NCBI GenBank assembly: GCA_000388065.2
Contig: KB932205.1
Length of the DNA: 44,556 bases
Reading direction: 5' to 3' (one strand)
DNA from: Fonticula alba ATCC 38817
Lineage: Eukaryota > Protista > Nucleariida
Positions 11,309-35,829 of the stretch are shown in pieces; position 1 is the first letter of the stretch; each line of letters starts with the position of its first letter. The position numbers and the translations under genes were made by a program. The notes under the pieces were generated by a model, which was not told the origin of the DNA, ran no database searches, and saw only the letters and a program-made list of their open reading frames with translations.

Positions 11309-12284
11309 TGGGGTTCTCTCTCCCTCGCCCCCCTTCTTTTCTCTTGTTCTCTCTCTCTCTCTCTCTCCCTCTCCTTGGCGGCTTTCTCGGTTCCCTGATT
11401 TGAGGCATGTGGACCTGTGCCTGCAGCGCGCGCGCGCGCGCGCGGGGGGGCGGAGTGGGCAGAGAATAGACCATTGCCGCTCTGCGCGCCCACCACGGCC
11501 GAAGAGGCAACCGAATTAAGCATCTTAATTGCCCACGAGCGATTCTAAACCCCGGTCCTGGGGGGGCGATCCCACGCGCGTGACGGACCGTCCCTGAGGG
11601 GATTTTCACCAAGCCACGCACCATTTTCGCCGCATCGCCCCGCTCCAGAACCCGCAGGCTGGAGGGGACATACTAATTGGGTGGATCGGTGTGGGGTGGC
11701 TTCTTCGACGGCGCGTGCACTCCGGAGTGGGACCGTGTGTCGGGGTGTGCGGACGCTCGGGCCGGGACGGCACCCGCCCATGACGAGGGGGGGGGGGGCG
11801 GGGAGGGCGCCGCGCCAGCCCGGGTCTCGGCGAGTACGTCGGGTGTCCTCCCCCCTCCCAGGGTGCTGACATGTCTCTTGGCCCTGGGTTTCTCGCGGGA
11901 TTCGCGGGGATCTGGGTCCGGACACGCCCATGTGTGCATTCCGCCAGGGTGCGCAAGGGTCCCCGAGGTGCTTGGCTTGGTGTGAGCCATTTTTCGTGGC
12001 CCATCTTCCCGGCCCAGCCACCGGACTGCGCTCCTAACCGACGGAGTTTCCCTCACCCCGGGTAAATGCTCTCTCTTCTCTCTCTCTCTCTCCCCTCCTC
12101 CTTCTTGTTTCCCCTCTTCTTCTCTCTCCCCACTACGTTCACCTCCGTCAAGCTCCCTCCCTCACGCACTCACCTCCCCCTCCCCCTTGCCCTCCCGCCC
12201 CTCTCTCTTTCGCCCCTTGGGATCACCAGACTGCCTTGTGCCCTTCTCCGCACCGCGCTGCCCGCCCTCCCCTCCCTCTACACC

Positions 12285-15200
12285 ATGTCCACGAAGTTCA
12301 ACCGCCCGCGCATCGAGGATGTCCTCACCCAGCGCTTCTTCATTCGCCCCTCCTTCGACATCTACGGCCCGGTCGGTGGTCTGTACGATCTCGGCCCCCC
12401 GGGGTCTGCTCTGCAGGCCAACCTGCTCGAGGAGTGGCGCCGCTTCTTCGTGGTCGAGGACCAGATCCTCGAGCTGGACACCTCCATCATGACCAAGGAG
12501 GATGTCTTCCGGTGCGCAGCCTCGCTCTGGCTTGCCTGTGTCGTCCCTCCCGGCTCCTCCGCTGACTTTCCCCACCTCTCTTTCCCCCCCCCCCCCTCCC
12601 CCCGGGTCCTGTGCTCAGCACGTCCGGCCACATTGAGCGCTTCACCGACTTCCTCGTCCGCGATGTCGTCACCCACGAGAGCCTGCGTGCTGACCACCTT
12701 CTGGAGGGTATGCATGCGCCTCCTTCCTCCCGGCCCCCTCTCAAAGGGCCCCCCCTTTCCCGGTTTCTTGCTCACCCTGTCCAACCCCCCCCCCCCCCCC
12801 TCGGTGCTGCCCTGCCCTCGTTCCCACCCGTGGCCAGAGTTCCTCACCAACTATCTGGCCAAGGCCAAGGTCTCCGATGAGACCCGCGCCGAGATCGAGG
12901 ATGTCATCAAGCGTGTATGTGTCGCAGTCCCTCTCTCTCTCTCCGCCCCCCCCTCTCCCCCTGCTCTATCCCCCGTCGAGTGACTGTTTGCTGACCCTTC
13001 CCCGCCGCCGCCTTTCAGGTTGACGACTACAGCGGCGAGGAGCTTGGCGCTGTCATGAAGAAGTACAACGTCAAGTCCCCGGCTGGCAACGACATCACCG
13101 ACCCCGCCCCCTTCAACCTGATGTTCTCTTCGAACATCGGCCCCCAGGGCAACGTCAAGGGGTACGTTTCCGGCTTCTCACTGGGGGGGGGGGGTCAAGG
13201 CCCTCCCCATGCTGTTCACCCTCTCCTCGGTTCCTGACCAAGTCCTCTCTCTCTCTCTCTCTCTGTCCTCCCTCCCCTCCCACCCCTGTGACTCCGCACG
13301 ATAGTTACCTTCGCCCGGAGACCGCTCAGGGGATGTTCGTCAACTTCAAGTACCTGTACGAGTACAACAACTGCCGGATGCCCTTCGCCGCGTCGCAGAT
13401 CGGCCGCGCCTTCCGTAACGAGATTTCCCCCCGGTCCGGCCTCCTGCGTGTTCGGTGCGCCCACTTTCCCCTGCCCCCTATTCGCTGATGTCGCTCGCTG
13501 CCTCGCGCTTCGGGGGCTTCCATTCGCCTGTCCGCGCGCACACGCACACACGCCCGATCACCTTCTCTTTGTCCCGCTCCCCTCTAACCTCTCCTCCCCC
13601 CCCCCCCGCCCCCCCTCTTCCTCCTCCTCCTGGCGCCCTGGTCAGTGAGTTCACCATGGCCGAGATCGAGCACTTCGTCCATCCCGACCGCAAGGACCAC
13701 CCCAAGTTCGTGACCGTCAAGGACATGGTGGTCCCCCTGTACCCTGCCCCGCCTCGTGACAAGTACGTGTGTGCCTGGGCCCTCGGCAGGCCTTGTGCCG
13801 TAGGGGGGTCCCTTCTCCGCGCTTCCTGGCCGGTCTTCCCCACCTGCTTGGGGGCCCCTTCTCTAACCTCCTCCCGCGCATTTCGCCGCTCTCCAACCAC
13901 AGCCCCGATCAGCCCCGCGAGATGGTCCACATGACCCTCGGCGACGCGGTGTCCCAGGGCATCATCAACAACGAGACCCTCGGCTACTTCCTTGGCCGCA
14001 TCTTCCTGTTCGCCAAGCGCATTGGCCTGCTGCCGGAGCACCTGCGCTTCCGCCAGCACGGTCTCAACGAGATGGCCCACTACGCCGCCGATTGCTGGGA
14101 TCTCGAGGTGGAGACCTCCTACGTGCGCCCGCCCCGTCCTCTCCCCTGCCGTGCCCCTTGCCGCCGCCTTGCTGCTGTGTGGCCTGCGCCGCATGCCCGA
14201 CTGACCACATTTCCATTCCCCCCTCCCCCCCCCGCTCCCCCCTCTCCTCCGTCCTCGTCTCTCCCTGCGCTCGCGGCCACAGGGCTGGGTCGAGTGTGTC
14301 GGCTGCGCTGACCGCTCCTGCTACGATCTGTCTCGCCATGAGGAGGTCACCCGCAAGGGCCTGGTCGCGGTCGAGCGCCTGGAGGAGCCTTACTTCGAGG
14401 TTCAGCGCAACCTGAAGCTGAACACCGGCGCCATTGCCAAGACCTTCCGCCAGCTGACCAACACCGTGAAGAACCACTTCCAGGGCATGGGCCAGGCGGA
14501 GCTGGAGGCCCTGCAGGAGCAGATCAAGGCCATCGGCAGCGGGAACCTGTCGTTCACCATCGACGGCCAGACTCACGAGATCGACGTCAGCTACCTGACC
14601 ATCACCGAGACCACCAAGAAGGTCGAGGGTGCGTACCCCCGCCCGCCGCAGGCCTGCCGCCTTCGCGCGCGCGTGCACACACACACGCACGCGAGGCCGC
14701 CTCCGTCCCCGGTGCTCCGACTGACGATCCAATTGTTCCTCGCCCCCCCCCCCCCTCCTCCTCCCCCGTCTCCCCATGGCAGTGCGCGAGTTCGTCCCCG
14801 GTGTCATTGAGCCGTCCTTCGGTATCGGCCGCCTGCTCTACTGCATCCTGGAGCACACCTTCACCCTGCGCGAGGAGGACACCGCCCGCAGCTACTTCCG
14901 CTTCAGCCCGCGTCTGGCCCCGGTCAAGGCGGTCCTGGCCCCGCTGTCCAACAACGCTGCCTTCACCCCGCTGATCGAGAAGCTCTGTATGTTCTCCGCG
15001 TCTGCCCCCCCCGCCCGCACCCCTCCCTGTTGGCTGTGACTCTGACCATCCTCCTCCTCCTCCTCCTCCCCGCTGCTCTCCCGCCTCCCCCCCCCCCCTC
15101 CTTCAGCTGCCGACCTCCGCAAGCACACCATCATGTACCGCATCGATGACTCGTCCAGCTCCATCGGCCGCCGGTATGCGCGCCTCGATGAGATCGGTGT

Positions 15201-15396
15201 CCCCTTCGCCCTGACCGTGGACTTCGAGTCTGTCAAGAACGAGACCTGCACCCTGCGCTTCCGTGACGACCCGCGCAGCCAGGTCCGCATGCCGATGGCC
15301 GAGGCCGGTGCCCTGGTCGCGGATCTGGTGGCCGGTACGACCACCTGGGAGGCCGTCCTGGCCAAGTACCCCCTGCACACTGCGCAGGATGTCTAA
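12285..15396 (+). CDS. GARS1: Glycyl-tRNA synthetase, eukaryotic homodimeric type, 620 aa, no WHEP domain; 10 exons: 12285-12511, 12619-12707, 12838-12914, 13019-13161, 13305-13454, 13646-13762, 13903-14122, 14283-14628, 14783-14986, 15107-15396
   Basis: Motifs [80 protein letters not shown] and the anticodon domain [12 protein letters not shown]. All nine introns are GT-AG and restore frame. Exon sum is 1863 nt. Confidence 0.97.
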
Positions 15397-16175
15397 GTGC
15401 CATGAGCATGGGACCTTGGGGGGAGGACCATGTGCGAGGCCTCTTCTGGTCGTCGTCCGTATGCGTCGGTTGCTGCTGTTGCGTGCGCGCACACCTGCTA
15501 CTCTGCCCCTCTCCCCCTCCCGGTTTGTATGGCACCTGCATCCGCCCGCCTTTGCTTGTGCGTAGGATGGACGCTTCCCGCTGGGTGCGTTGCTGTGCAT
15601 GTGTACGCCCTGCTGGCGCGAATAAAGATGGGGTGTCTATTTTCTCCCCCCCCCCCCCTCCCCACCTTTCAGCGTGCATGAGCTTCCGCACAGGTCAAAG
15701 GTGCACACCCGCGCACAGATGCATTTACATACACCCGCACACATGTATGTGGGTGTGCGCACCACCACAGTCCCTCCGGGAAGCACCCAGCCCCCGCTCA
15801 AGGACAAGACCGCTTGCCATCAAGAGCGTGGAGATGAGAGAGTGTGCAGAGATACATTGGAGGGGGGGGGGGGGAACGCAGGCAGGAGATGGACATTTTC
15901 GGAAGGGGAGACACGGGGGAGAGGGAGGTGCGTGTGCAGAATATCAAGGCCTCGGCAGCAGAGCGCCATGACCGGCCTTTTGCTGTTCGGTGTGCGCTCG
16001 TCATGACACTCGCGCGCCTCGCTCTCTCCCTCTGACATGGTGAGAGAGAGAGGAGCCGTGAGAGAGAAAAAAAAGGGGGAAGAAAGAGACACAGGAGCGG
16101 GAGGGGGGAGGAAGGGGCCTGCGACACAGGGAACACCTTCTCCCTGCCCCCTCCCCCCCTCCCCATGTTGCGCGC

Positions 16176-17429
16176 TTAGTTGGCCAGGGTCTTGGGCATG
16201 CCGGCCGCGTCGAGCAGCGAGGCCTCAGGGTCGGCGATAACCTCCGGACCACCGCCAGGCAGGGAGAAGAGCAGGCCGTCCACGGCGCCGGGGGCCGCCT
16301 GGAAGGGGGCGACCAGCTCGGCGGTGGCGGCGGGGTTGGCGGGGGCGTAGTCGGCAGCCGCCCAGGCAGGCAGGACCTCGTCGTGGGCATCGGAGAACCA
16401 GGCATCGCCGTTGGCACGCAGGCCATTGGCCGGGCGGTAGAGGGCGGCCACGGCATCGAGCCAGGCACGGCAGGCCTCGCGCTTGATGTAGACCACGGCA
16501 TTGGGGCCGGCGTCGTAGGTGTACGCGGCCATGATGGCGCCCTGCTGCTCGTTGAAGCGGTGCACCAGCTGAATCAGGTCGCGCGAGGTGTCGTTCAGGT
16601 AGAAAATCGGCGGGTAGGTGTCCAGGCAGGTGGCATGGAACTGGTTGCTGTCCTCCATGGTGAGCTTGGCGAAGGCGTCGAAGTCGCGAGCGGCGATGGC
16701 CTGGCGCATGGCCTCCATGCGGGCCGGGACCACGTGCGCCGCGCGGTAGGTGTGCAGCGGGGAGGTGCGCACGGTGGTCTGCATGCCGGAGGTGGAAGAG
16801 ACGGTCTTCTTCTCGGCCGAGACGATGTGCACGAAGATGGCCATCTCCGGCCAGTGGCCCTCGTCGGCCAGCTGGACGGCGTGGCTGCCGAAGTCCTCGT
16901 CCTCCGGGCTGGCGGCCTCCTCGTAGCCGTGCTCCCAGGCGACGTAGCCGCCGAAGAGCGACCGGCAGGCCGAGCCGGAGCCCTGGCGAGCGATGCCGGA
17001 CAGGACGTCATTGCCGGCCTGCAGGCCGTACGCCTTGGCCAGGGAGAAGGCCAGGCAGGCGAAGCCGGAGGCCGAAGAGGCCAGCCCGGCGGCCGTGGGG
17101 AAGGAGTTGTGCGAGGCGACGTGCGCGTGCCACTCGGCCCGGGGGTTGCCCTCCTGGCGGGCAAGGCGCCGGATCAGGTCGAAGACCTTGGCCAGGCGGG
17201 TGCCCGCGCGCGAGGCATTGGCATCCTCCTTGCCGTTGAGCCACAGCCGGTCGGCCGGGTGCTCGGGGCTCAGGTGCACGGAGGTGGTGGTCCGGAGGGC
17301 CTTCTGGCTGAGGGTGACCGAGATCGAGCCGTTGGTGGGGAGGTTGCGCTCGACATCGCGCTTGCCCCAGTACTTGATGATGGCGATGTTGACCGGGGCG
17401 GTGCAGGTGACGGAGGCGGACTCGGACAT
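16176..17429 (-). CDS. MVD: Diphosphomevalonate decarboxylase (GHMP kinase fold), 417 aa, intronless
   Basis: APVNIAIIKYWGKRD, NSFPTAAGLASSASG, ARQGSGSACRSLFGG, DSNQFHATCLDTYPPIFYLN and AYTYDAGPNAV. The ATG lies 20 nt from an N gap but sits in a good ACACCATG context. Confidence 0.95.
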   Translation of the reverse strand: MSESASVTCTAPVNIAIIKYWGKRDVERNLPTNGSISVTLSQKALRTTTSVHLSPEHPADRLWLNGKEDANASRAGTRLAKVFDLIRRLARQEGNPRAEWHAHVASHNSFPTAAGLASSASGFACLAFSLAKAYGLQAGNDVLSGIARQGSGSACRSLFGGYVAWEHGYEEAASPEDEDFGSHAVQLADEGHWPEMAIFVHIVSAEKKTVSSTSGMQTTVRTSPLHTYRAAHVVPARMEAMRQAIAARDFDAFAKLTMEDSNQFHATCLDTYPPIFYLNDTSRDLIQLVHRFNEQQGAIMAAYTYDAGPNAVVYIKREACRAWLDAVAALYRPANGLRANGDAWFSDAHDEVLPAWAAADYAPANPAATAELVAPFQAAPGAVDGLLFSLPGGGPEVIADPEASLLDAAGMPKTLAN

Positions 17430-17449
17430 GGTGTGTCGGGGGGGGGGGG

Positions 17450-17617
17450 NNNNNNNNNNNNNNNNNNNNNNNNNNNNNNNNNNNNNNNNNNNNNNNNNNN
17501 NNNNNNNNNNNNNNNNNNNNNNNNNNNNNNNNNNNNNNNNNNNNNNNNNNNNNNNNNNNNNNNNNNNNNNNNNNNNNNNNNNNNNNNNNNNNNNNNNNNN
17601 NNNNNNNNNNNNNNNNN
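17450..17617. other. Assembly gap just upstream of MVD
   Basis: N run flanked by G tracts. Confidence 1.
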
Positions 17618-19062
17618 AGGGGGGGGGGAGGGAGGGGGCGGGGCGATGGGGATACCTTTCGAGCGTGGGGGGAGGAGGGTCTTGGTGGCGAGGGGGCCGG
17701 CGAGCCTGACCGGGGAGATGGCTCGAGTTGTACCCTCCGCGCGTCTGTCCTCCGCCCCCCCCCCCCCCCGCCCTTCCCCCAAGTCCCGGCGGTGGGTCCT
17801 TCAGCCGGCTGCTCGATGTCGGCGGTGTGTGGGCGCCACAGTGCCGAGCCTGACGCTCGAGTCGTGGTGGGGCGCCGGCGTCCGGCAGCCGGTGCGGGCC
17901 GCGCGGTGCGCGACAGGGCATGCATTCCCCCGGTGCGTCCGTGCATGATGCGAGTGTGTCTTCCCTGCGGGGGGGGGGGGATCACCCTCAGCGCCGGGTC
18001 CGAGGACACACCAGCGCCCTGGCGCGGCCGTGCTCGGGAGGGGGGGGGGGAGGCAGGCGGCGCCGAGGGACTGGGCCTCGGGCCGGCCGAATGACCTGAT
18101 ACCGGTCGCTCCGGTCCGGAGGGAGCCGGAGAAATGGCGGGAGATCGCATGGCCAACCCGCGCGGGCGGCTCGGGCGGTGCTTCCATTGAAGAACGGTTC
18201 TCTTATTCGTGCTGAATAGTATTCCGCCCATGTGATACACCCCTACGAGCATCCCCGTGCTCCGGGGCCCTCGTACCGTCGGGGTCCGAGACTCCGTCGG
18301 GGCCGGCCGCGGGGGAACGAGGGGCGCGCCCCGATCGGGGCATCCCGCCACCCGCGCCCCGAAGGCCGGCCAGGGGGCCCGCGACGATCTGCACTGCGTG
18401 CGGGTTTGTTTACTCCCGCGGGTATTAGTAGAGGCCCACGGCCCCGGGCGCGTCTCTGTCAGTAGACGCGGCAGGAATGCGCGCGGGCGGCCTCGGTCTG
18501 TTGTTTTTGATGCCTGCAATCGGCCAGAGTTGGGTGGATGCCTGCTTGTATGTGTGCGTGGTTGCCAGGGCGGGGGGGGGGGGGGGGCCTTTGGCCAGAT
18601 CTCGTAGATCGCGGGTGAGGACCCCCGTGGCAGGGGATGGTTCCTTTTTTTTTCTCCCGCGTCCCTTCTCCTCCTGCGGGGCCGAAAGACGCGAGGCCGG
18701 TGCTCGAGATCGCCGAGCCGGGCGCGGGCAATCATTTGCCAAGGCGGTGCCCGGGGGGCATGCTCCGTGGTTTTTGCCTGCCGGTGCCCTTTGGCGGTGG
18801 CCCAGACTCCATCACCTTTGGATCGGACCTGCGACGGCAGCCCCCGGGGAATGGACCCGCTTGCGCTTTTGCCCGCGGTCGGAAAGGTCGCTGCCCGACA
18901 CACAGCACAGCCTCCCGGCTGAGGCCGGCGGCCATGGTGGTGTTCCCCGCGAAGGCCTTCGACGGAGGGGACGAGGGCCGGACCGAAGATAGCGGCAGAA
19001 GAGGGAGCCCGTGGGCGCCTCCTCGCCCCGGGCAGGCAATACCCCTCCCTCTGTTGCATCTC

Positions 19063-19064
<2 letters not shown>

Positions 19065-19096
<32 letters not shown>
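19065..19096 (+). repeat. (CA)16 microsatellite upstream of the PRM1-like gene
   Basis: Direct reading. Confidence 0.95.
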
Positions 19097-19098
<2 letters not shown>

Positions 19099-19359
19099 AC
19101 CTTCTGACAGAGCCGCCTTTCTCATCCCACACTCCTTGACTTGGGCCCTCGCCCCTTGCCTCCGCCCCGCTGTCCCGCCTCTCGCGACCCCTTCTCTCCG
19201 ACCCGATTGCCGACGCCGTGCGACGAGTCATCTGGCCAGAAGAGGTCCCGCGCGCCGCGAGCTCGCCCCGCACCATCGATACACACACAAACAAGGACAC
19301 GCACACACACACACACACAAGGACACACACAGATACGCCCACCCCTTCGACAGTCAAGG

Positions 19360-21653
19360 ATGGGCCAAAAGCAAGCCTGTACGTGCCGCCAAAAGGACGG
19401 CCCCCGGCCGGCGGCTTGAAGATGCCTCGCCCCTGCCCCCAACTAACGCGGTGGTTTTGCTTTCGCTCTTTTTTTTTTGCACCCCTCCCGGCGCGCGGGG
19501 CAGACAAACGGTCCAAGACCTCCCGGCTGGCGGGGCTGATCATCTTCTTCCGCGCGGCCTTCTGCCTGACGGTCTTGGGGCTCGGCATCGCCGCCAGCTA
19601 TACCTACTCCCTGAGCGGGTACCTGGAGCAGATGCACGAACGAACGCGCTCCGCCGCGCACGGGGCATGCATGCTGGCGGAGGACACCCTGCGCGGGGCG
19701 GTGGCCCTGCCGGAGCGCGCGGCCCAGGCCATCGACGAGGCCCTGGTGTCGGCCACCAATGCCGGGGCCGGGCTGCTGGAGGCCGCGGCAGCCGGGGCCA
19801 CCTCCGGGGCGGTCGACGCGCTGGAAGCCTCCACCGAGATGCTGGTCCGGGGGATGACCTGCTCGGTGGACCAGCAGCTGGAGAGCCTGCTGACCCTGGC
19901 AGCCGGCCAGGCGGATGCCGCGCAGCTGGTGGCCGACGGGTCGGTGCTGCTGGCACGCAGTGCCCTTCGAGCCGCGGAAAACATCACCTCCAGCATCCTG
20001 TCGGCCTTCGACCAGTTGACCCAGGGCGTGGTGCGCCAGTGGAATGACCTGCTGGATGGCCTGGCGCGGACCTTCCCCGGGCTGAATGCCCCGGCGCTGA
20101 TGCTGCCGCCGGCCCCCCGGCGACCGACCTTCCCCCAATTGGAGGATGTGGATGTGCGAGGCCCGGTGCTGGCGGCCCTGGCCCAGGTCCCGGCCCCGGG
20201 GTCGCTGGTGGGCGACACCGTCCAGCGGCAAATCACCCGCGGGATGGAGGCCCTGCGCGAGGTGGCCGCCGGGGCGCGGCCCACATTGGATCACCTCCGG
20301 CTGCCGGCCGGGTCTCGGCCGCTGGACGCGGCGGCCAGCATGCGCGAGGCCCTGGCCCGGGCCGACGACGTGTTGAGCTTCTGCGCGCGGGTGGACTACC
20401 GGCCCCTGGACGAGGTGTTCCGCTTTGCGCGCATGGTGGTGGACATCGGCACCGCGGTGCTCATCTGCCTGGCGGTCATGTACGCCACCGGGGCCGGGCT
20501 CAGTGCCTACTCTTCCTACCGGTGGAATCGCGTTCTCTGGCTGAGTGCCCTTCGTGGCCGGGGCCGGGATGGCGACCGGCCGGCCGGCCAGCCGGGCCCA
20601 TGGCCCGACAAGAGCTGGTGGTCGCGCGCCATCGCCGCCACTTGGACCTGGATCCGGCACTTCCTGGCCGTGGCCCATCACCCCCCCTCGCTGACCATGC
20701 TGCTGATCGGCCTCATCGGGGTGGTCATCTGTGCGCTGGTGCTCTTCGGCCTGCACCGGGCCGAGGATAGCTTCATCGAGCAGGTGGTCCCGGCCATGAC
20801 CGCCTCGCTGGAGGCCGCGTCGCAGGGGCTGCTACAGGTGACCATGGAGGCGTCGGCCGCGGCCGCCGGCCGGGCCAATGCCCAAATCGCCGGCATCGAG
20901 AATGCCCTGGCAGCGTACACCCGGCTGAGCAATGCCGGCCCGGTGGAGCTGTCCCCGGGCCCGGTGCTGGATGCCCTGGACCTGATCGACAAGACGTGGA
21001 AGCAAAATGGCGCGTCGGTCTTCCTGCCGATCTCCTGCACCATCGACACCATCAAGCGGGTCCTGGCCGGCCTGAGTCAGGTGGACTTCGCGGCGCTCCT
21101 GCCGCGGCTGGCCTTCCCGCGCGTGCCGGAGGACATCCTGGCCTTGGATGCGTCGGCCGTGCCGCGCCTGGCGGGTGATGGCATTGCCACGGCCGCCAGC
21201 GCCTCGATCGAGGCCTGCCGGCGGTACATCCGCCAAACGCGCAACGGCTTCATTGTCATGCTCATCTTCGGGGCATGTGTCCCGGCGGCGGCCATCATCT
21301 ACGCCACGGTCATGGTGGTCCAGGGCCAGGGGCCGGCCGATGACCCGGTGGCCGCCCACCGGCGCGCTCGCCAATCGGCCAGCGGCCAGGAGCAGCAGCA
21401 GCAGCAGCAGGCCCCCCTGGAGAAGGAGGGCGCTGTCGCCGCATCGCCGCCCATCCCACCGCGCGGCAACGCCGGTCTGACCCACCGCGGCCCGGCGCCG
21501 GCTGCCGGGGCCACCGCCATGGCCACGAACATCCCGCCGCGGCCGCCCCGATCCACGGACGGCTTCATCGTCCGGCCGCCGCTCGGGGGAGGGGTCAGCC
21601 CACTCACGCATGGGGGGTTCTGCCCGCCGCCCCCGGGACCATCATCCTTCTAG
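19360..21653 (+). CDS. PRM1: Prm1-like multi-pass plasma-membrane fusion protein, ~722 aa; exons 19360-19378 and 19504-21653
   Basis: Four TM segments flank two large loops. Cys motifs GACMLAEDTLRGAVALP, MTCSVD, LSFCAR and LPISCTID sit where fungal Prm1 has its conserved cysteines. The first intron GTACGT(19379)...ACTAAC...GCAG(19503) gives MGQKQAYKRSK. Recognised from memory of the family, not by a search. Confidence 0.68.
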
Positions 21654-21804
21654 TGCGCCCCCCGTGGAGGGGGGACCCCCGATGTGCGCCGCCGGGGCCC
21701 GGAGGCGATGGGGCCCGAGCCATGTGCCGGCGCCACCCAATATAGACAACACATACACCCGCCTGAAGGGGACATCCGGGGCTGTGAAAGGCCGGGGCAG
21801 ACCA

Positions 21805-21872
21805 AGGGCGAGGGCGAGGGCGAGGGCGAGGGCGAGGGCGAGGTCGTGAGCGAGACAAGGACAAGGACAAGG
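21805..21872 (+). repeat. Compound hexamer repeat (AGGGCG)6 ... (ACAAGG)3 downstream of the PRM1-like stop
   Basis: Direct reading. Confidence 0.9.
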
Positions 21873-22456
21873 GCAGCATCATGACACAATCACCCAAAAG
21901 TTGCCCCGCTCTTCCCCCTAGATGGGGCCACCACCGCCACCCCACGCATGCGGCGCGGGCCCGGGCGTTCCACCGGGCGGCAACGGCGGCCCGCCCCCCC
22001 GTCCCGCCTACCTCGCCCCCGACGGGGACCCCGGCCGATCCATGGCGATGGTGGCGCCCCTCGTCTCACACGTCCGTGGGCACATCCCCCACCTGGCCCG
22101 CCCCGCGGCACAGCGCGTCCCGCCTCTTTCGTGCGGTGGAGGGCGGGGGGGGGGGGGGGGACGCCCGGCTCGGACGCCGGGCCCCTGCGATCGTTCGAGG
22201 CGAGTCTGCCGTCCGTTTTGAACCCCAGAGACAGGCCGGGGGGGGACGAGGCCGGGGCGTGTTCGCCGGGCCAACGGCCATAAGGCGCGGCGCGTCCCGG
22301 CCTCGGGGAGCCTCTGCTCGAGCGGCGACATCGCTCTCCAACCACCTCCCCCCCCCCTCCCTCCCCCCGCCCCTGTCCTGTGCCCTCTCCCCCTCCTCTC
22401 TCCCCTCTCCGCCCTACCTGCGCCATTTCCCGAACGAAAGCGATGCCTCCGTCGTC

Positions 22457-25400
22457 ATGACGGACAGCCTGCCCGCAACGCGGATTGTTGTCTCGACCAC
22501 GGGGTTCTCGCGGGCTGAGCGTGAGCTGCTCACACGGCGCCTGCAGCGCCTTGGGATTGGCGTCACTCCGCACTTCAACCCCCTGGAGGCGGGGTTCCTG
22601 ATCGCCGCCGGCCCGGGCCCCGGCGATCCGGATGGCGGGTATTCGCAATCCCAGCGCCCGGGGCCGGCCGGCGCCGACGGCCCAGGCGCGGCCCCTGCCC
22701 CCGGGCCTCCGCTCAAGCTCCTGACCGCGCACCGGTGGAACATCCCGATCGTCACCATTCAGTACGCTGCCGATGGCCATGCTTTCCTCCCTCCCTCCCT
22801 CTCTCCCCCCCCCCCCCCCCCCCCTCCCCTCCGCCTGTCCCACTTGTGCCGGACTCCCCTCCCCCTCTTCTGACGCTTTGACCCTGGGATTGCTCGTGGA
22901 ATCGCCCATCTGGTCAGCCGTCCAAATGGCCGGAAAAGAAGGGGGTCCTTAGGTCCTGCCTGGTGTTGGGGCCTTCCCCCTGCCATGTGCCCGTTTGCTT
23001 GCCTTCCGTGCGAACTTGTACCCCCTCCGCCTCATGGCGCCCAGGCGGCATCTCAAGCGAGCGCCTTTCCGCTGACCTCCAAGCAGAGTGTGAACTCGAT
23101 GCTGACCCAGCAGCGCGAGAGCGCCCTGGACCTGCCTAGCCCTCCCCGCGGTCGCCGGCCTGTGGGCGCCCCTCCCCGGCTCCATTTCATCTCTCGGGGC
23201 CCCTCGGTGTCCCGCTCGCTGACCCGCGCCCTGCCCGCCCCCCCCCCCCCCCCCCCCCCCCCCGGCCCTCCCTGCCGGGTCTTGCTGTCGGTTGGATTCT
23301 GACCCGCTCGGCCTGCTGCGTGGCCCAGGTGGGTTGACCACCTGGAAAAGACCATGGCCCTGGAGTGCAAGTCCCACAATGTCACCCCGCCGCTGTTCGG
23401 GCCGGAGGCCACGACCGCCGACCAGATGGCCTTCCCCCTGGCGGCCGGGCTTTCGACCCCGCCGCCGGAGCTGCTGCGCCTGCAGCGTGTGCGCCAGGCA
23501 GTGGCCCCCCGCCTGGCGGATATGGCCGTGGCCTCGGCCCGGCGCTTTTTGGCGCCGGCTCCCCTGCCACCGCCGGGGGCCGGGGCCATCGATTGGCGCA
23601 GCTCCATCGGCCTGGTGTCTTTCGTCGCCGGGGAGGCGGCCCCCGGCCAGGGCACCGGCGCCGTGGATGCCGGCGCGATCCCCGGGCTCGGGGCCGACAA
23701 GGTCGCGCGGCTTGCCCGCTTCCGCCACTCGGTGGAGCGGCACATCCGGGCCTTGGGCAGGGCCCTCCACGGGCCGGGGGCCCCGGCCGCCGGGGGGCTG
23801 GTCCAGGCGCCGGCTCTCTGCTCGGTGGACTCGACAATCCGGCTGCTGGCCCAGCTGGACCGGGGGACCCTGGCCTCGGCGGCCGCCACCCTGGCCCGGC
23901 TCCGGGGGCACCTTTTCGAGGAGTATGCCCGGCGCATGGACGAGGTGAACCTCGGCCAGGCGGTGCTCTGCCCGGCGTACCTGGTGGTCCTGCACCGGCT
24001 GGACAGCCGCGACGCGGCCGGCGGCAGTCAAGCCCCCGGCAGCCCCGGCGGCCCGGGCAGCGAGGACCTTGGCCGCCTGCGCCTGCGCCGCCTGTGGGAA
24101 GCCTTCCCATATGCGCGGCTGGTGAGCCGCAAGTGGGCCATCGAGCTGTGCGGCCTGCCTGTCGGGGACTTTGCCATGCGCTTCCCGGCGGCGGTTTTCC
24201 GCGCCCTGCCGCAGCAGCTGCCCATGTCGCTGCTGGTGGATGACAGCCAGCACATGCTGCGTGTTCCCCAGCCCGGCCGGGGGCCGGACCACCAGTCGTC
24301 CTCCGGCCGGACACCCGGATCGCGCCGGGCCCGGGCCCAGCCCGTGCCCCCCTCGGTGCCAGGCTTGTCCAACTCGGCCGGCTCGCCGGTGGCCATGCCA
24401 CCGGCCATGACGGCGGGGGGCCTGCCATCGGCCGGGCCGCGCGTCGCCGCCCCGGCCCCGGCCCCGGCCCCGGCCCCGGCCCCGGCCCCCGCCGCCGCCG
24501 TGGCATCCGGACCGGGGCCGGATGCCCCGGCGGCCGGCTCCCCGGCGGCCGACATGGCGGATCTCCCACGCCCGGAGGCCATTGCCCCGGCGGATTGTGC
24601 CTTTCTCTCGGGCGACCCCGGGTCATGGGTGCTCGGGATGCTGGAGGGCGCGCGGGTGCTCCTGTCGGAGGGCTTTTCCTCGGCCGAGCGTAATCTCCTG
24701 GTGCAGGGGCTGAATGCCTCGTCGGCGGTTCGCTGCCAGGCCCCGGGCCAACGCCCGACGCACATCCTCGTGCCGGAGGCCCGGCTGCCCGGGGCCGCGA
24801 CCGCCGACGGCGGGCTCTCCTCGGGTGCGGCCGGTGCCGGGCCCTTTGGCCGGTCGGTGGTTCGCCTGTCCGACGCGGCGGTCGGGCATCTGCTGCTGGG
24901 CCCGACCGATGTGGAGACCCTGGCCAGTGCGCGCGAGGCGGCCGGTCTGCCGGCCGTCGGGCCGGAGGCCGGGGAGCTCTTCGACGACCTGTATGACGCC
25001 TTCCCCCATGGGCAGTCGGTGCTGACCGGGTCGATGATGCTCTCCTCCGGGGCGTCCTTCGGGTCGTTGGAGGAGCTCGCGGCTTTGGGGGCCGGTGCCG
25101 GGGGTCGGGGATCCTTGGGCCCCGGGCGCGCGGCCGGCGCAACGGACGGCCCGGTGTGCGTGGCCCCCGGCTGGCTGGTGTGTGTCCTGCAGGGGGGCGA
25201 CCCGGATCCCGGGGACTGGAATGACGCCTCCGGCCGGCACATTCGTCGGTATGGGCATGCCGGGGCCGTGCCGCCGGCCGCTCGGGCCGCGGCCGAGGCC
25301 GCACGACGCGAGCGCGCCGATGCCGAGGTCCAGGCGGCCGCCGCCGCCGTGAATGCCACCGCATCGTCTCTCATGCTGATGGCCGACGAGGGCCCGGCAA

Positions 25401-28387
25401 CCCCGGGCGGCGGCGGTCCAGCCGGGCGCCTGCGCGTCCGAGCGGCGGGGTCTTCGTTGCGGGCGCGGCGTCTTCCGGCCGGGGCCCGCGGCGTGCCGAC
25501 TACCCCGACGGGCGGCGCCGGGCCGGCATCCCTGCTGGCCCCCACCTTCGACCTGGGTGCCGGGGATTTGGGGCTCCTCTCGCGGTCGCTGCTGTCGCCC
25601 ACGCCGGGGCCCGGCGATCTGGACATGCCGCCGGTGCCCCGGGGCGTGGGCATGTCCCTGGGCGACCAGCCGGCGGGGGGGCCCCTGCGTGGCGTGGGCC
25701 TGGTTTTGGGCCCGCGCTTGCGCCCGGCGGCCGATGTGCTGCGCGAGCTGGCCACCGACCTCGGGGCCACGATCCTCCCCTCGGCCACCGCGGCCCAGGC
25801 CACGCACTACCTGCACTTTGACCTGTCGGTCTTCAAGGGGCCCGTGCGGCCGGAGGATGTGGCACACCGGTCGGCCCTCTTTGGGCTGGTGCTGCGGGCG
25901 GCGGCCAGCGCCGCGGCGCCCGGCCCGCAGCGTGCCAGCACCGTCGCCGGGGCCAGCCCCGGCCTCACGGAGGTCGATCTGCGCCGGGCCTGGCGCGATC
26001 AGGAGGCCTTGGCCGAGGCCCGGCGCCGGCGCCTGACCCTGGTCCACCCCTGCTGGCTGGAGGCCTGTGAGCAGCGGGGCCGGCGCCTGGCGGACCTCTC
26101 CTTTCCGGCTGGCTTTGATCCGCGGCAGTCGCTGTCGGGCTACGAGCCGGCCGGGGCGCTGTCGGCCGCCGGTTCGGCGGTCTCCTCCCTGCTGCTGACG
26201 CCGACATCCTCCAAGGCGGCCACTTCGCTGTCTTCTCCCTCGGCTGCGCCGTTGCCGGCGCCCTTGACGGCCCTCGGGCACCACGACCATTGGGAGGGGG
26301 GGCTGCTGCCTCCGACGCCACGCCTTGGGCGGTCGCGCTCGGTCGCCGGCGCCGACGAGGACCAGGACGACATTCGCGACTCCACGCAGTACTATGAGGA
26401 GCTTCATCGCGATGACATCATCCTCCGACCGGCCTTCGCTTCGACCCAGGAGCAGACCTTCTTCCAGGCGGCCCTTGGCCGGCCACTGAACCCGGGTCCC
26501 CAGCATTGGGCCGGCCTTTCGAGCGCCGAGCCCCGGGGGTCGGCCTTTCCCCCGGCCACCGACACGGCCGAGGTGGATCGGGCCCTGAATGAGATGCTGG
26601 CCCTGGGGCCGGAGCCTGCGGCCGGCCCGGAGGAGGACACCGCGCCGCTGGCGCTGTCGGCGCTGGTTCGGCGACAGCCGGCGGGCTCGGCCGGGCGCCG
26701 GGCGCCATCGCACCTGGGTGCCAGCAGCGCCGGGGCGTCTCCCCCTGCCGGGGGCGGGTCCTCCGACTCGCTGGCCGGCCTGTTGGACTCGGATTCCGAC
26801 TACTCGACGCACCTGGCGGAGGATGATTTCGATTTCCTCGACCCGATCCCCTCGTCGCAGTTTGCCTTCACCCAGGCGGTGTCGCGATCGGGCCCGGCCA
26901 GCGGCCACCACGGCTCATCCTCCTCCCTGGCTCCGACACCGGCGGCTCGAGGGAATGGCCATGCGGAGCACTCCCCCGGCGGGCATGCGTACCAGTCGCC
27001 GGCGGCCGGGCCGGGCGGAGCCCTGCAACAGGTGTCCTACGACGACACCATGGCCAAGCTCCGTGCTCGTTCTCTCATCAAAGACCTGTATGTCGTGCTG
27101 GTGTCGGCTTTGTGCCGACTGCTCTCCCTCCCAGTCGCTTTCTTTCTTCTTTCCTTTTCCCTCTCCCTCTCTTTCTCTCTCCTGTCTGACACCTGACCTT
27201 CACCGGTGCAGGCCGCGGTACTTTTACTGTAGCTCCTCCCTTAGCAGCGCTGCCAAAGGCGATCTCCGCAAAAGTGCGCATCTTTTCTCCTTCTCTCTTT
27301 TCTCTCTTTTCTCTCTCTTCTCTCTCTTTTCTCTCTTTTCTCTCTCTTCTCTCTCTTTTCTCTCTCCTCTCTCTTCTCTCTCTTTTCTCTCTCTCCTCTC
27401 TCTTCTCTCTTTTCTCTCTCTTCNNNNNNNNNNTTCTCTCTTTTCTCTCTCTTCTCTCTCTTTTCTCTCTCCTCTCTCTTCTCTCTCTTTTCTCTCTCTC
27501 CTCTCTCTTCTCTCTTTTCTCTCTCTTCTCTCTCTTTTCTCTCTTCTCTCTCCCCTCTCTCCCCTCTCTCCCTCCCACTCGCTCCATACACGCCGCCTCT
27601 GCTGACCCATCCGCTGGCCACACAGTGATCCAGCAACTTGGCGGAAACGACGCCATCGAGCCGATCGGCGCGCGTCGCGACCCAAGAGCCTCCCTCTCCG
27701 ACAGCCCCTTTGGCCGATGCACACATATGATTGTCAACAGCTTCGTGGCCAGCGAGCGCTTCCTGCGCGCCATCGCCGGGGGGAGCTGGTTCCTCCCGCC
27801 AGCCTATGTGGCTGATAGCTTCGCGTCGAATGTCTTTTTGGAGGAGTCGGCATACGACCTGGCCGGCGAGGCCGAGGCCGAGGCCGACACCGGCGATGGT
27901 CCGCAACTGGCCACAGCCGATGACCCCTCGTCGGGGCTCATGGGTCTGCCCAAATTGACTGGCATCACAAATACCGATCGGCTGATTGCCCTGTCCAGCC
28001 GGTATTGGCGTCTGCGCTTGACCGTGGTCCGGCAGGTGTGGCAAACGGTGATCAAGTCGCCTGAGCTGACCGGCAGCGCCGGCTTCCAGGCCTTCCTGCG
28101 GGGCCTGGTGCCGGAGCCCTTCCGTGACCGGACCCCCGTGCATGGGGCCTTCACCACCTGGAGGGTGCACATCTGGCGCAAGCGCACCGTCCCAACATGG
28201 ACACGCGTCGAGGGAGTAGCAAGGCTGCTACAAGCCGGCGGTGCCTTCTCCGTGGCTGTGCTCGACAGTGAGCACATCGCCAAGTTGAATGGCGGCAGCG
28301 CGACTTTGGTCGACTGTGATGGCCAACCTTTGGATGCCGTACGTCTTCTTTGCCAGCTCCCCCTATGTCTTTTCCTCTCCCTTCCTC

Positions 28388-28431
<44 letters not shown>

Positions 28432-29346
28432 TCTCTCTCTCTCTCTCTTTCTCTTTCTCTCTCTCTTTCTCTTTCTCTTTCTCTCTCTTTCTTTCCCTCT
28501 CTTTCTCTCTCTTTCTTTCCCTCTCTTTCTCTCTCTTTCTTTCCCTCTCTCTCTCTCTTTCTCTCCCTTTCTCCTTCTTCTCCCCCCTCCCCCCTCCCCC
28601 CTCCCACTCCTCCTGACTCCATCCCCCATCCGTGCACATGCATGTAGACCCCTCCGACCCATGTGTTCTTGGACTTTGCCCCCTCGCTCGAGGAGTACAC
28701 GTCCCTGCTGAATCACTACCAGCGGCACTTTGCCAACATGGCTGCCAGCTGGCACAGCCTGCTGCTTTTTTTGCACCTTATCGACCGTCTGGTCCGCCGA
28801 TCGCCCAGCCTGGCGCCGGCCGAGTTTTCGCCCTTCCGCCGGCACAGCTCCATGGAGGCCACAATTGCCGAGGAATTCTGCCACGCCGCGCTGGCCGAGC
28901 TCCGGATCATCTTCCATCCATCGGCCGACCGGCCGCCTGGCCTCGATGAGCCGGACGATGCCGGGCGCCTGGCTGGGATTCTGGCCGAGCTGGCGGCCAA
29001 GGGCGGGGAGCTTGGCAGCCCGCTGGCTGCCTTCGCCCCGGTGGCCGACCGCGACCTCCCGGCCCTCTGCCTGACCGACTTGTCATACGTATACCAGTAT
29101 CTGCTGCACCCGGGCGGGCTGCCACCCTCGCGGGCCAACTACCCGGCACTGTCGGCCACGGCCGCCGCCACCACCACCACCACCACCGGTGCCTCTCCTC
29201 CGCCAGCGCCCACGGCCAAACGAGCCACATCGGCCGGCTCCACCGCGTCGGAGCCCAAGACGACCGGGGCCAAGCGCCAACGGACGTCCTCTGCCGCCGG
29301 TCACGCCTCGGCTGGCAGTCGCCGCGGGAGTGGTGCCACCGCTTGA
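22457..29346 (+). CDS. TOPBP1: TopBP1/Rad4/Dpb11-family multi-BRCT checkpoint and replication scaffold, ~1,845 aa; exons 22457-22761, 23329-27087, 27212-27273, 27626-28338, 28648-29346
   Basis: N-terminal BRCT (VVSTTGFS...NIPIVTIQ|WVDHL). BRCT6-like (PLRGVGLVLG...LVHPCWLEAC...FPAGFDPRQSLS). BRCT7-like (CTHMIVNSFVASERFLRAIAGGSWFLPPAY). BRCT8-like (GAFTTWRVHI...RLLQAGGA...THVFLD). Exon sum is 5538 nt (3n). Confidence 0.85.
27284..27575 (+). repeat. Homopyrimidine (CT/TTCTCTCT) tract in TopBP1 intron 3, containing a 10-N gap
   Basis: About 290 nt of almost pure C/T. Confidence 0.9.
28370..28575 (+). repeat. Homopyrimidine (CT/CTTT) tract in TopBP1 intron 4
   Basis: Direct reading. Confidence 0.9.
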
Positions 29347-34935: not shown

Positions 34936-35829
34936 NNNNNNNNNNNNNNNNNNNNNNNNNNNNNNNNNNNNNNNNNNNNNNNNNNNNNNNNNNNNNNNNN
35001 NNNNNNNNNNNNNNNNNNNNNNNNNNNNNNNNNNNNNNNNNNNNNNNNNNNNNNNNNNNNNNNNNNNNNNNNNNNNNNNNNNNNNNNNNNNNNNNNNNNN
35101 NNNNNNNNNNNNNNNNNNNNNNNNNNNNNNNNNNNNNNNNNNNNNNNNNNNNNNNNNNNNNNNNNNNNNNNNNNNNNNNNNNNNNNNNNNNNNNNNNNNN
35201 NNNNNNNNNNNNNNNNNNNNNNNNNNNNNNNNNNNNNNNNNNNNNNNNNNNNNNNNNNNNNNNNNNNNNNNNNNNNNNNNNNNNNNNNNNNNNNNNNNNN
35301 NNNNNNNNNNNNNNNNNNNNNNNNNNNNNNNNNNNNNNNNNNNNNNNNNNNNNNNNNNNNNNNNNNNNNNNNNNNNNNNNNNNNNNNNNNNNNNNNNNNN
35401 NNNNNNNNNNNNNNNNNNNNNNNNNNNNNNNNNNNNNNNNNNNNNNNNNNNNNNNNNNNNNNNNNNNNNNNNNNNNNNNNNNNNNNNNNNNNNNNNNNNN
35501 NNNNNNNNNNNNNNNNNNNNNNNNNNNNNNNNNNNNNNNNNNNNNNNNNNNNNNNNNNNNNNNNNNNNNNNNNNNNNNNNNNNNNNNNNNNNNNNNNNNN
35601 NNNNNNNNNNNNNNNNNNNNNNNNNNNNNNNNNNNNNNNNNNNNNNNNNNNNNNNNNNNNNNNNNNNNNNNNNNNNNNNNNNNNNNNNNNNNNNNNNNNN
35701 NNNNNNNNNNNNNNNNNNNNNNNNNNNNNNNNNNNNNNNNNNNNNNNNNNNNNNNNNNNNNNNNNNNNNNNNNNNNNNNNNNNNNNNNNNNNNNNNNNNN
35801 NNNNNNNNNNNNNNNNNNNNNNNNNNNNN
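34936..35829. other. Assembly gap between divergent MED21 and RRP1
   Basis: N run. Confidence 1.

What the first reader, a model, noticed from the sequence alone, without database searches (positions are those of the whole stretch)
19360..21653. Probable Prm1 mating cell-fusion protein in an apparently non-fungal (nucleariid-like) genome
Seen in sequence: a 4-TM protein with an N-terminal TM, a ~290-aa loop carrying GAC..E......P, MTC and LSFC, two central TMs, a second loop with LPISCTID followed by LAFPRVP, and a final TM. Established: Prm1 is the pheromone-induced plasma-membrane fusion factor of fungi (S. cerevisiae, S. pombe, Neurospora, Cryptococcus), with this topology and four extracellular cysteines, and is generally treated as fungal. 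Inference: if the organism is Fonticula-like, Prm1 predates the fungi-nucleariid split, which would point to a cryptic sexual cycle or a role in cell fusion during aggregation.
Basis: partly seen in the sequence, partly recalled or inferred. Interest (0 to 1): 0.85.

Follow-up and report, generated by a model that had tools for sequence, protein, structure and literature searches.

The report
Prm1 fusion-protein homologue in Fonticula alba
This is a real, transcribed gene of the slime-mould-like amoeba Fonticula alba that encodes a very divergent relative of Prm1, the fungal cell-fusion helper; public databases already label it so, but it shows the family is older than fungi.

Summary
Window 19360-21653 (+) carries a two-exon gene with a 125-nt GT..AG intron at 19379-19503. 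Its 722-aa product is identical to Fonticula alba H696_03416. RNA contigs from four runs carry exactly this spliced form.

The Prm1 reading is supported:
- A precomputed Pfam PF27758 (PRM1) hit at E<=1e-5.
- The UniRef name "Plasma membrane fusion protein PRM1".
- PRM1 clusters as the top language-model matches for the whole protein and for each half.
- All 30 best Foldseek hits in Swiss-Prot are fungal PRM1, collinear over almost the full length.

Prominin and tweety appear only as weak second-tier matches.

Similarity is very low (12-16% identity). Single-sequence HMMER finds only one orphan metagenomic relative. My structural model is poor (pLDDT 42).

The identification is therefore already in databases. 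The literature still lists Prm1 as a fungal novelty (PMC10406608). The modest new point is that PRM1 dates back at least to the common ancestor of Fonticula and fungi. Its role in Fonticula (sex, somatic fusion or membrane integrity) is untested.

The parts
19106..19359 (+). 5' UTR (at least this far upstream). It contains a (CA)9 microsatellite at 19302-19319 and no upstream ATG.
   Evidence: RNA contigs start at 19106.
19360..19378 (+). Exon 1 coding part: MGQKQA plus the first base of the Tyr7 codon.
   Evidence: The spliced translation equals P0001. The joint 19378>19504 is present in 4 RNA runs.
19379..19503 (+). Spliceosomal intron, 125 nt, GT..AG, with a T-rich tract before the acceptor.
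   Evidence: GC content 0.656.
19504..21653 (+). Exon 2 coding part, residues 7-722 plus the TAG stop.
21654..21712 (+). 3' UTR (minimum extent).
   Evidence: The RNA contig reaches 21712.
19536..19592 (+). TM1 (residues 18-36), preceded by a K/R-rich cytosolic N-terminus.
   Evidence: KD hydropathy 2.27. Coordinates checked.
19593..20423 (+). Ecto-loop 1 (residues 37-313, 277 aa), predicted mostly helical. It holds Cys62, Cys126 and Cys300. A mildly hydrophobic Ala/Gly-rich stretch at 86-113 lies upstream of Cys126. The single N-x-S/T site is at N166.
   Evidence: Cys62 and Cys126 are conserved in P0003.
19860..19862 (+). Cys126 codon (motif MTC), the positional candidate for yeast Cys-120.
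   Evidence: It is invariant between P0001 and P0003. In P0003 a hydrophobic stretch (KD 1.81) precedes the conserved Cys. The yeast role of Cys-120 comes from PMC2868043. Residue-level equivalence with yeast was not tested.
20424..20501 (+). TM2 (residues 314-339).
20502..20696 (+). Cytosolic loop (residues 340-404), Arg/Trp-rich (9 K/R against 3 D/E).
20697..20753 (+). TM3 (residues 405-423).
   Evidence: KD 2.98.
20754..21248 (+). Ecto-loop 2 (residues 424-588, 165 aa), with LPISCTID (Cys518), LAFPRVPEDILALD and Cys578.
   Evidence: This half gives the strongest PRM1 signal: features score 0.92, and structure TM 0.54 by query.
21036..21038 (+). Cys518 codon (motif ISC), the positional candidate for yeast Cys-545.
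   Evidence: I-S-C is invariant between P0001 and P0003. Yeast Cys-545 lies in the most conserved stretch of loop 2 (PMC2868043). Equivalence is inferred, not aligned.
21249..21305 (+). TM4 (residues 589-607).
   Evidence: KD 2.42.
21306..21650 (+). Cytosolic C-terminal tail (residues 608-722), low-complexity and rich in Gln and Pro.

Best explanation
The gene encodes the Fonticula alba member of the PRM1 family (H696_03416). This is a four-pass plasma-membrane protein with both termini in the cytosol and two large helical extracellular loops. By analogy with fungal Prm1, it most likely forms a disulfide-linked homodimer through one cysteine in each loop; the candidates are Cys126 and Cys518. 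It would then act at sites of tight cell-cell contact to promote bilayer merger and prevent lysis. That makes it an organiser or facilitator of fusion rather than a proven fusogen. What is shown here: the gene is real, spliced and transcribed; the organism is non-fungal; the topology is as described; and the protein is a PRM1 family member. What is inferred: dimerisation through these two cysteines, plasma-membrane location, and a role in cell-cell fusion. The life-cycle stage is also inferred and could be cryptic mating, somatic merging of amoebae in collectives, or membrane-integrity control. Because the gene has native composition and an intron and is equally distant from all fungal Prm1, it is best read as vertically inherited. 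That places the origin of PRM1 no later than the common ancestor of Fonticula and fungi.
For: Identity and organism: the product is 100% identical to F. alba H696_03416, which UniRef names PRM1, on NCBI scaffold KB932205.1.

Real gene: a spliced transcript contig is present in 4 RNA runs. GC3 is 0.895, like the neighbouring MVD (0.935) and ProRS exons (0.88-0.92).

Family membership:
- Precomputed Pfam PF27758 PRM1 hit with no weak mark, meaning E<=1e-5.
- ESM features: the top three clusters are all PRM1, at 0.95, 0.94 and 0.93 with 217-222 of 256 shared features.
- The N-half and C-half each return PRM1 first (0.86 and 0.92), and the C-half also does so by structure (TM 0.54 by query).
- Foldseek against 550,129 Swiss-Prot models: ranks 1-30 are all fungal PRM1, from asco- and basidiomycetes and including S. 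cerevisiae, S. pombe, N. crassa and Cryptococcus. E-values run from 1.3e-4 to 3e-2, probability reaches 1.00, and alignments cover query residues about 47-621.
- Controls with the same model against PDB and viral libraries give nothing at E<=1e-3.

Topology: the four spans are spaced like those of Cryptococcus Prm1, which lie at 67-87, 352-371, 433-455 and 647-688 (PMC5720818), compared with 18-36, 314-339, 405-423 and 589-607 here.

Fast family evolution: S. cerevisiae and C. albicans Prm1 are only 20% identical (PMC2185589), so 12-16% identity to Fonticula is not surprising.

Mechanistic template: the yeast C120-C545 intermolecular disulfide is required for activity (PMC2868043). A role for N. 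crassa PRM1 in vegetative as well as sexual fusion rests only on the title of Fleissner et al. 2009, seen in a reference list; the paper itself was not held.
Against: Direct sequence similarity is marginal. Exhaustive phmmer over 1.84 billion representatives found no fungal Prm1 at E<=1e-3 and only one real relative, the orphan P0003 (E 3e-4, 25% identity). The local Pfam copy lacks PF27758, so I could not recompute the profile score. The AF2 model is poor (pLDDT 42.4, pTM 0.35). Foldseek TM-scores are only 0.12-0.27 with rmsd of 35-60 A, so the hits reflect local 3Di-plus-residue alignment and not a demonstrated common 3D fold. In the larger AFDB cluster library, PRM1 ranks 1, 2, 4, 12, 23 and 30 but is interleaved with chemoreceptors and a prominin. 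I could not obtain fungal sequences, so the cysteine equivalence, a reciprocal best hit and a phylogeny are all untested. No sex or heterologous cell fusion has been described in F. alba in the papers I could read. The loops carry only one N-glycosylation sequon, against 14 in yeast. The transcript is abundant in ordinary culture RNA, unlike pheromone-induced yeast PRM1.
Confidence: 0.85

Rival explanations
1. It is a prominin/tweety-like membrane-shaping protein: a multi-pass protein with two helical ecto-loops that bends membranes or sheds vesicles. On this reading the PRM1 label reflects only a shared architecture and not orthology or a fusion role.
For: Prominin, tweety and DC-STAMP/Dcst2 clusters are the consistent second tier in the ESM feature searches, at 0.72-0.82. 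A Prominin-1-A-like model ranks 6th in AFDB clusters (E 1.8e-3, probability 0.75). TTYH2 and TTYH3 structures recur among the PDB hits.
Against: PRM1 outranks them everywhere: 0.95 against 0.79 and 0.75 by features, and 30 of 30 top Swiss-Prot hits. The PDB TTYH hits are non-significant (E 0.35-1.2). Pfam models for Prominin (PF05478) and Tweety (PF04906) give no hit even at E<=10. The protein has four spans here, whereas those families have five (my own knowledge, not tested here).
Confidence: 0.07
2. It is a true PRM1 homologue, but its job in Fonticula is not gamete fusion. It would act constitutively in plasma-membrane integrity, or in re-merging of sister cells and syncytium tolerance in a wall-less amoeba. 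The mating role would then be a later fungal specialisation.
For: Transcript contig depth is about 101 and 89, against ProRS at 40 and 56 and MVD at 22 and 34 in the same libraries. F. alba daughters often retract or fuse back together, and large multi-daughter cells occur (PMC9097593). Yeast prm1 mutants lyse at contact sites (PMC5720818 introduction). N. crassa PRM1 reportedly acts in vegetative fusion too, known here only from the title of Fleissner et al. 2009.
Against: Contig word depth is a poor measure of expression, and the runs were chosen because they hold this gene (tool caveat). The culture stage of the libraries is unknown and may include aggregating or fruiting cells. No functional data exist.
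Confidence: 0.35
3. The gene reached Fonticula by horizontal transfer from a fungus or a giant virus, so it says nothing about the age of PRM1.
For: One ESM PRM1-domain cluster lists Nucleocytoviricota among its few taxon-labelled members. The best viral Foldseek hit is a Pandoravirus protein (E 7e-3).
Against: The gene has a spliceosomal intron, and its GC and GC3 are indistinguishable from flanking housekeeping genes. It is roughly equally distant (12-16% identity) from ascomycete and basidiomycete Prm1. No close donor exists among 1.84 billion representatives. The viral hit is at noise level.
Confidence: 0.04

Closest known systems
Fungal Prm1 (S. cerevisiae YNL279W/P53835, S. pombe prm1, N. 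crassa prm-1, Cryptococcus PRM1; Pfam PF27758, InterPro IPR026777)
   Same: Both have four membrane spans with nearly the same spacing, two large helical ecto-loops and cytosolic termini. A cysteine in loop 1 follows a hydrophobic stretch, and another cysteine sits in the best-conserved part of loop 2. The Fonticula protein hits the family profile, and all top Foldseek and ESM matches are PRM1.
   Different: Identity is only 12-16%, and fungal members are not detectable by single-sequence HMMER at library scale. There is one N-glycosylation sequon against 14 in yeast. The host is a wall-less amoeba with no known mating. The transcript is present in ordinary culture RNA, whereas the yeast gene is induced 31-fold by pheromone. 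The tail is Gln/Pro-rich.
P0003, an orphan 726-aa protein from a bioreactor metagenome contig (ENA ERZ922528, L001)
   Same: It is the nearest relative (25% identity over residues 72-607, E 3e-4). It has the same four-span layout and conserves Cys62, Cys126, I-S-C518 and the LA(F/I)P.V..DI.A motif. Its Pfam PRM1 hit is marked weak.
   Different: Its organism is unknown. The gene is intronless, with GC of 52-63%. The hydrophobic stretch before the loop-1 cysteine is stronger (KD 1.81 against 1.07).
Prominin (PF05478) and Tweety/TTYH (PF04906)
   Same: They are multi-pass membrane proteins with two large helical extracellular loops, and they recur as second-tier matches.
   Different: There is no Pfam hit to either family. 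Their scores are always weaker than PRM1, and the PDB matches are non-significant. They have a different number of spans (five, from my own knowledge).
DC-STAMP / DCST (PF07782, PF26039), animal fusion-associated multi-pass proteins
   Same: They are linked to cell fusion, and one cluster appears at rank 42 of the N-half ESM search (0.73).
   Different: The score is well below the level the tool treats as a lead, and nothing else supports the link.

Membership tests
PRM1 (Pfam PF27758 / InterPro IPR026777) | Significant match to the family profile | tested here: met
   The precomputed Pfam hit PF27758:PRM1 carries no weak or faint mark, meaning E<=1e-5 (also listed). I could not recompute it, because the local Pfam copy lacks this model.
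PRM1 (Pfam PF27758 / InterPro IPR026777) | Four membrane spans, two large extracellular loops, cytosolic N- and C-termini | tested here: met
   Hydropathy spans lie at 18-36, 314-339, 405-423 and 589-607. The positive-inside pattern fits. The spacing matches Cryptococcus Prm1 (PMC5720818). This rests on prediction only.
PRM1 (Pfam PF27758 / InterPro IPR026777) | Collinear, near full-length similarity to experimentally studied fungal Prm1 proteins, better than to any other family | tested here: met
   In Foldseek against Swiss-Prot, ranks 1-30 are all PRM1, including P53835, Q9P771, Q7S130 and P0CQ04. E-values run from 1.3e-4 to 3e-2 over query residues about 47-621. TM-scores are low (0.12-0.27) because the model is poor.
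PRM1 (Pfam PF27758 / InterPro IPR026777) | The cysteine pair equivalent to yeast Cys-120 and Cys-545 that makes the covalent dimer | tested here: inconclusive
   Cys126 (after a hydrophobic stretch) and Cys518 (in the best-conserved loop-2 motif) are conserved in P0003 and sit where the yeast paper describes them. No residue-level alignment to a fungal sequence could be made.
PRM1 (Pfam PF27758 / InterPro IPR026777) | Reciprocal best hit and phylogenetic placement with fungal Prm1 | not tested
   No tool available here would return fungal Prm1 sequences. The word-index searches returned only the query itself.
PRM1 (Pfam PF27758 / InterPro IPR026777) | Expression induced at mating or fusion | tested here: inconclusive
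   The transcript is present in 2012 RNA libraries of unknown stage, at contig depth at or above two housekeeping neighbours. No stage series was available.
PRM1 (Pfam PF27758 / InterPro IPR026777) | Localisation to cell-contact sites, and a fusion-arrest or lysis phenotype on loss | not testable with these tools
   This needs tagging and a knock-out in F. alba, or complementation in yeast.
Prominin (PF05478) | Match to the family profile | tested here: not met
   hmmscan of P0001 against Pfam-A at E<=10 returns only a sub-threshold PknG_TPR hit. ESM scores are 0.77-0.80, below PRM1.
Tweety / TTYH (PF04906) | Match to the family profile, or a significant structural match to solved TTYH structures | tested here: not met
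   There is no Pfam hit. The PDB TTYH2 and TTYH3 hits have E 0.35-1.2 and probability <=0.15. The model quality limits this test.

The most novel reading that the evidence does not exclude
Fonticula alba has an undescribed cell-cell fusion step, either cryptic mating or regulated somatic merging of amoebae within its collectives, that uses this Prm1. If so, the Prm1-based fusion machinery arose in a wall-less amoeboid holomycotan before fungi and was later recruited to fungal mating. A bolder variant is that PRM1, prominin, tweety and DC-STAMP form one ancient superfamily of two-ecto-loop membrane-remodelling proteins, with this divergent sequence as a bridge.
Probability: 0.3. Interest if true: 0.7.

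Novelty: already known. Interest (0 to 1): 0.35.

Why it matters
Fungi lack the ancestral gamete fusogen HAP2, and their fusogen is unknown. Prm1 is the best-studied facilitator of fungal fusion (PMC6504885). A bona fide PRM1 in Fonticula corrects the published listing of Prm1 as a fungal novelty (PMC10406608) and dates the family to at least the common ancestor of Fonticula and fungi. It also offers a wall-less, aggregative organism in which Prm1's membrane step could be studied without cell-wall remodelling, and it gives a concrete marker to look for hidden fusion or sex in nucleariids. The identification itself, however, is already carried by UniRef and Pfam.

Tried and rejected
- **Local Pfam scan of the protein.** It gave no PRM1 hit because the local copy lacks PF27758, not because the protein fails the model.
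- **Word-index homologue searches with P0001 and P0003.** Each returned only the query. The family is too divergent to share 5-residue words, so I could not get fungal Prm1 sequences. That ruled out hhalign, a residue-level cysteine alignment, a deep MSA and a tree.
- **Exhaustive phmmer.** It gave one real relative (P0003) and one spurious repeat protein, P0002, whose match covers only residues 336-378.
- **The search for related loci in JGI metagenomes and IMG/VR.** Patterns matched, but tblastn confirmed no relative.
- **AF2 with a two-sequence alignment.** The model was poor (pLDDT 42.4), so the shape-only ESM Atlas search returned meaningless hits. The PDB and viral searches serve only as negative controls.
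- **Search of PDB chain sequences.** No hit.
- **Placing P0003's organism through its CaMK neighbour.** The best hits were about 50% identical fragments from assorted fungi and metagenomes, which is uninformative.
- **Earlier findings of this scan.** Nothing was on record.
- **A chance ORF in GC-rich DNA.** Rejected because of the spliced transcript.
- **An unspliced start at ATG 19422.** Rejected because that ATG lies inside the removed intron.
Full report
**What is there**

Window 19218-21653 (+) holds an uninterrupted 811-codon reading frame. The real gene starts at ATG 19360 in another frame and joins that frame through a 125-nt GT..AG intron at 19379-19503. It is letter-for-letter the deposited Fonticula alba protein H696_03416, labelled P0001 here.

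Transcript contigs from four 2012 RNA runs (two samples) cover 19106-19378 joined directly to 19504-21712. So the gene is transcribed and spliced exactly as proposed. There is no ATG upstream of 19360 in the 5' UTR, and the alternative ATG at 19422 lies inside the intron.

The scaffold is NCBI KB932205.1 of assembly GCA_000388065.2, so the "nucleariid-like" guess is correct. The neighbouring genes are:
- a class-II prolyl-type tRNA synthetase at window 12285-15396 (+);
- mevalonate-diphosphate decarboxylase at 16176-17429 (-);
- a 1845-aa protein with no Pfam hit at 22457-29346 (+);
- a gene with a weak PWI-domain hit.

**Anatomy**

Hydropathy gives four spans at residues 18-36, 314-339, 405-423 and 589-607. 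The N-terminus (5 K/R, 0 D/E) and the TM2-TM3 linker (9 K/R, 3 D/E) are basic, while the two long loops are net acidic. This fits an N-in/C-in topology with loops of 277 and 165 aa facing outward.

The loops hold five cysteines: 62, 126 and 300 in loop 1, and 518 and 578 in loop 2. AF2 predicts both loops as long helices, but with low confidence. The C-terminal 115 residues are Gln/Pro-rich low complexity. Coding GC is 0.717 and GC3 is 0.895, which matches the flanking housekeeping genes.

**Is it Prm1?**

Several lines of evidence agree, though some (the UniRef name and the Pfam hit) may share a source.

1. The precomputed Pfam annotation is PF27758 (PRM1) without a "weak" mark, meaning E<=1e-5, and UniRef already names the protein "Plasma membrane fusion protein PRM1". 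My local Pfam copy lacks this recent model, which explains the empty scans.
2. In ESM Atlas feature space, the three nearest clusters are all PRM1, at 0.95, 0.94 and 0.93 with 217-222 of 256 shared features. Prominin scores 0.79 and tweety 0.75.
3. Each half of the protein on its own returns PRM1 first. The N-half scores 0.86. The C-half scores 0.92, and the Atlas's own model of the C-half matches a PRM1 cluster at TM 0.54 by query.
4. My AF2 model is poor (pLDDT 42.4). Even so, Foldseek against 550,129 Swiss-Prot models returns fungal PRM1 at every one of the first 30 ranks. These include the studied proteins of S. cerevisiae, S. pombe, N. crassa and Cryptococcus. E-values run from 1.3e-4 to 3e-2, and the alignments are collinear over query residues about 47-621.
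5. The same model against PDB and against viral models gives nothing at E<=1e-3. A generic long-helix model therefore does not produce such scores by itself.
6. The span spacing matches Cryptococcus Prm1 (PMC5720818).

The weaknesses are real:
- Foldseek TM-scores are only 0.12-0.27, so a common 3D fold is not shown.
- In the 2.3-million-cluster AFDB library, PRM1 entries rank 1, 2, 4, 12, 23 and 30 but are mixed with chemoreceptors and a prominin.
- Exhaustive single-sequence HMMER over 1.84 billion representatives finds no fungal Prm1 at E<=1e-3. It finds only one true relative, P0003, an orphan 726-aa protein on a 4.3-kb bioreactor-metagenome contig.

Prm1 evolves fast. S. cerevisiae and C. 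albicans Prm1 are only 20% identical (PMC2185589). I therefore put family membership at about 0.9.

**Cysteines**

In yeast, reciprocal intermolecular Cys-120-Cys-545 disulfides are required for activity. Cys-120 follows a conserved hydrophobic stretch in loop 1, and Cys-545 sits in the most conserved part of loop 2 (PMC2868043).

In the P0001/P0003 alignment, the conserved loop cysteines are Cys62, Cys126 and Cys518, while Cys300 and Cys578 are not conserved. Cys126 follows a hydrophobic stretch (KD 1.07 in Fonticula, 1.81 in P0003). Cys518 lies in the conserved I-S-C motif, shortly before the LA(F/I)P.V..DI.A motif.

These are the natural candidates for the dimerising pair. However, I could not obtain fungal sequences to align, so the equivalence is inferred.

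**How it probably works**

This part is inference from the fungal template. The protein would form a disulfide-linked dimer in the plasma membrane, concentrate where two cells are tightly apposed, and favour productive bilayer merger over lysis. Prm1 is a facilitator and not a demonstrated fusogen (PMC6504885; PMC2868043).

When Fonticula uses it is unknown. No sex is described in the papers I could read. Toret et al. report branching collectives, daughters that "retract or fuse back together", and large cells that yield more than two daughters (PMC9097593). N. crassa PRM1 reportedly acts in vegetative as well as sexual fusion, but I know this only from the title of Fleissner et al. 2009 in a reference list; the paper itself was not held.

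In the available RNA libraries, the PRM1 transcript contig has word depth of about 101 and 89. ProRS has 40 and 56, and MVD has 22 and 34. This is a crude measure and the culture stage is unknown. Still, the gene is clearly not silent in culture, unlike yeast PRM1, which is induced 31-fold by pheromone. I therefore give a somatic or constitutive role (0.35) at least as much weight as a strictly sexual one.

**Rivals**

Those families appear only as a weak second tier, and their Pfam models do not match.
- Horizontal transfer is unlikely, given the intron, the native codon usage, the equal distance to all fungal clades and the absence of any close donor.
- A chance ORF is excluded by the spliced transcript.

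**Novelty**

The identification is already in UniRef and Pfam, so I rate it "already known". No paper in the searched library mentions Prm1 in Fonticula or nucleariids.

Merenyi et al. 2023 list Prm1 among fungal novelties. Their PRM1 group (mcl_3379) scores zero in all leading taxon columns, although F. alba was in their data set (I did not decode the column headers). The divergent Fonticula protein was evidently missed by their clustering.

The modest new point is that PRM1 predates fungi, at least to the common ancestor of Fonticula and fungi. The step from there to a cryptic sexual cycle is speculation.

**What I could not do**

I could not run a profile-profile comparison with the PRM1 seed, test a reciprocal best hit, build a phylogeny, make a good structural model, or take an inventory of other fusion and meiosis genes in the genome. 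These are listed as next steps.

Noticed in passing
P0001 as a whole (window 19360-21653): Prominin, tweety/TTYH and DC-STAMP/Dcst2 recur as the second tier behind PRM1 in every similarity search (ESM 0.72-0.82; AFDB-cluster prominin at rank 6, E 1.8e-3; PDB TTYH2 at E 0.35). This may hint at a deep superfamily of multi-pass proteins with two helical ecto-loops.
   Followed up: partly
L001:2086-4266 (+), protein P0003: This is the only detectable close relative of the Fonticula protein among 1.84 billion representatives. It is an orphan, intronless 726-aa PRM1-like gene on a 4.3-kb bioreactor-metagenome contig. Its organism is unresolved; the best hits of its CaMK neighbour are only about 50% identical.
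   Followed up: partly
window 12200-17600 and 19000-21900: In the same RNA runs, the PRM1 transcript contig has higher word depth (about 101 and 89) than the ProRS (40 and 56) and MVD (22 and 34) neighbours. ProRS shows at least seven GT..AG introns of 107-191 nt.
   Followed up: partly
window 22457-29346 (+): A 1845-aa predicted protein directly downstream of PRM1 has no Pfam hit on record. A 2283-aa product upstream, ending at 11308, also has none.
   Followed up: no
window 5845-5985, 17450-17617, 27424-27433, 34936-35829, 41592-42303: Assembly gaps (runs of N). The one at 17450-17617 lies just upstream of the MVD start and produces the X-run in a spurious long ORF.
   Followed up: yes
window 19065-19096 and 19302-19319: (CA)n microsatellites lie at the 5' edge of the PRM1 transcript and inside its 5' UTR. 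The read-laying tool skipped these as repeats.
   Followed up: no
ESM Atlas cluster (rank 1): A 182-aa cluster named 'PRM1 domain-containing protein' lists Nucleocytoviricota among its few taxon-labelled members. The best viral Foldseek hit was a Pandoravirus celtis protein, at noise level (E 7e-3).
   Followed up: partly
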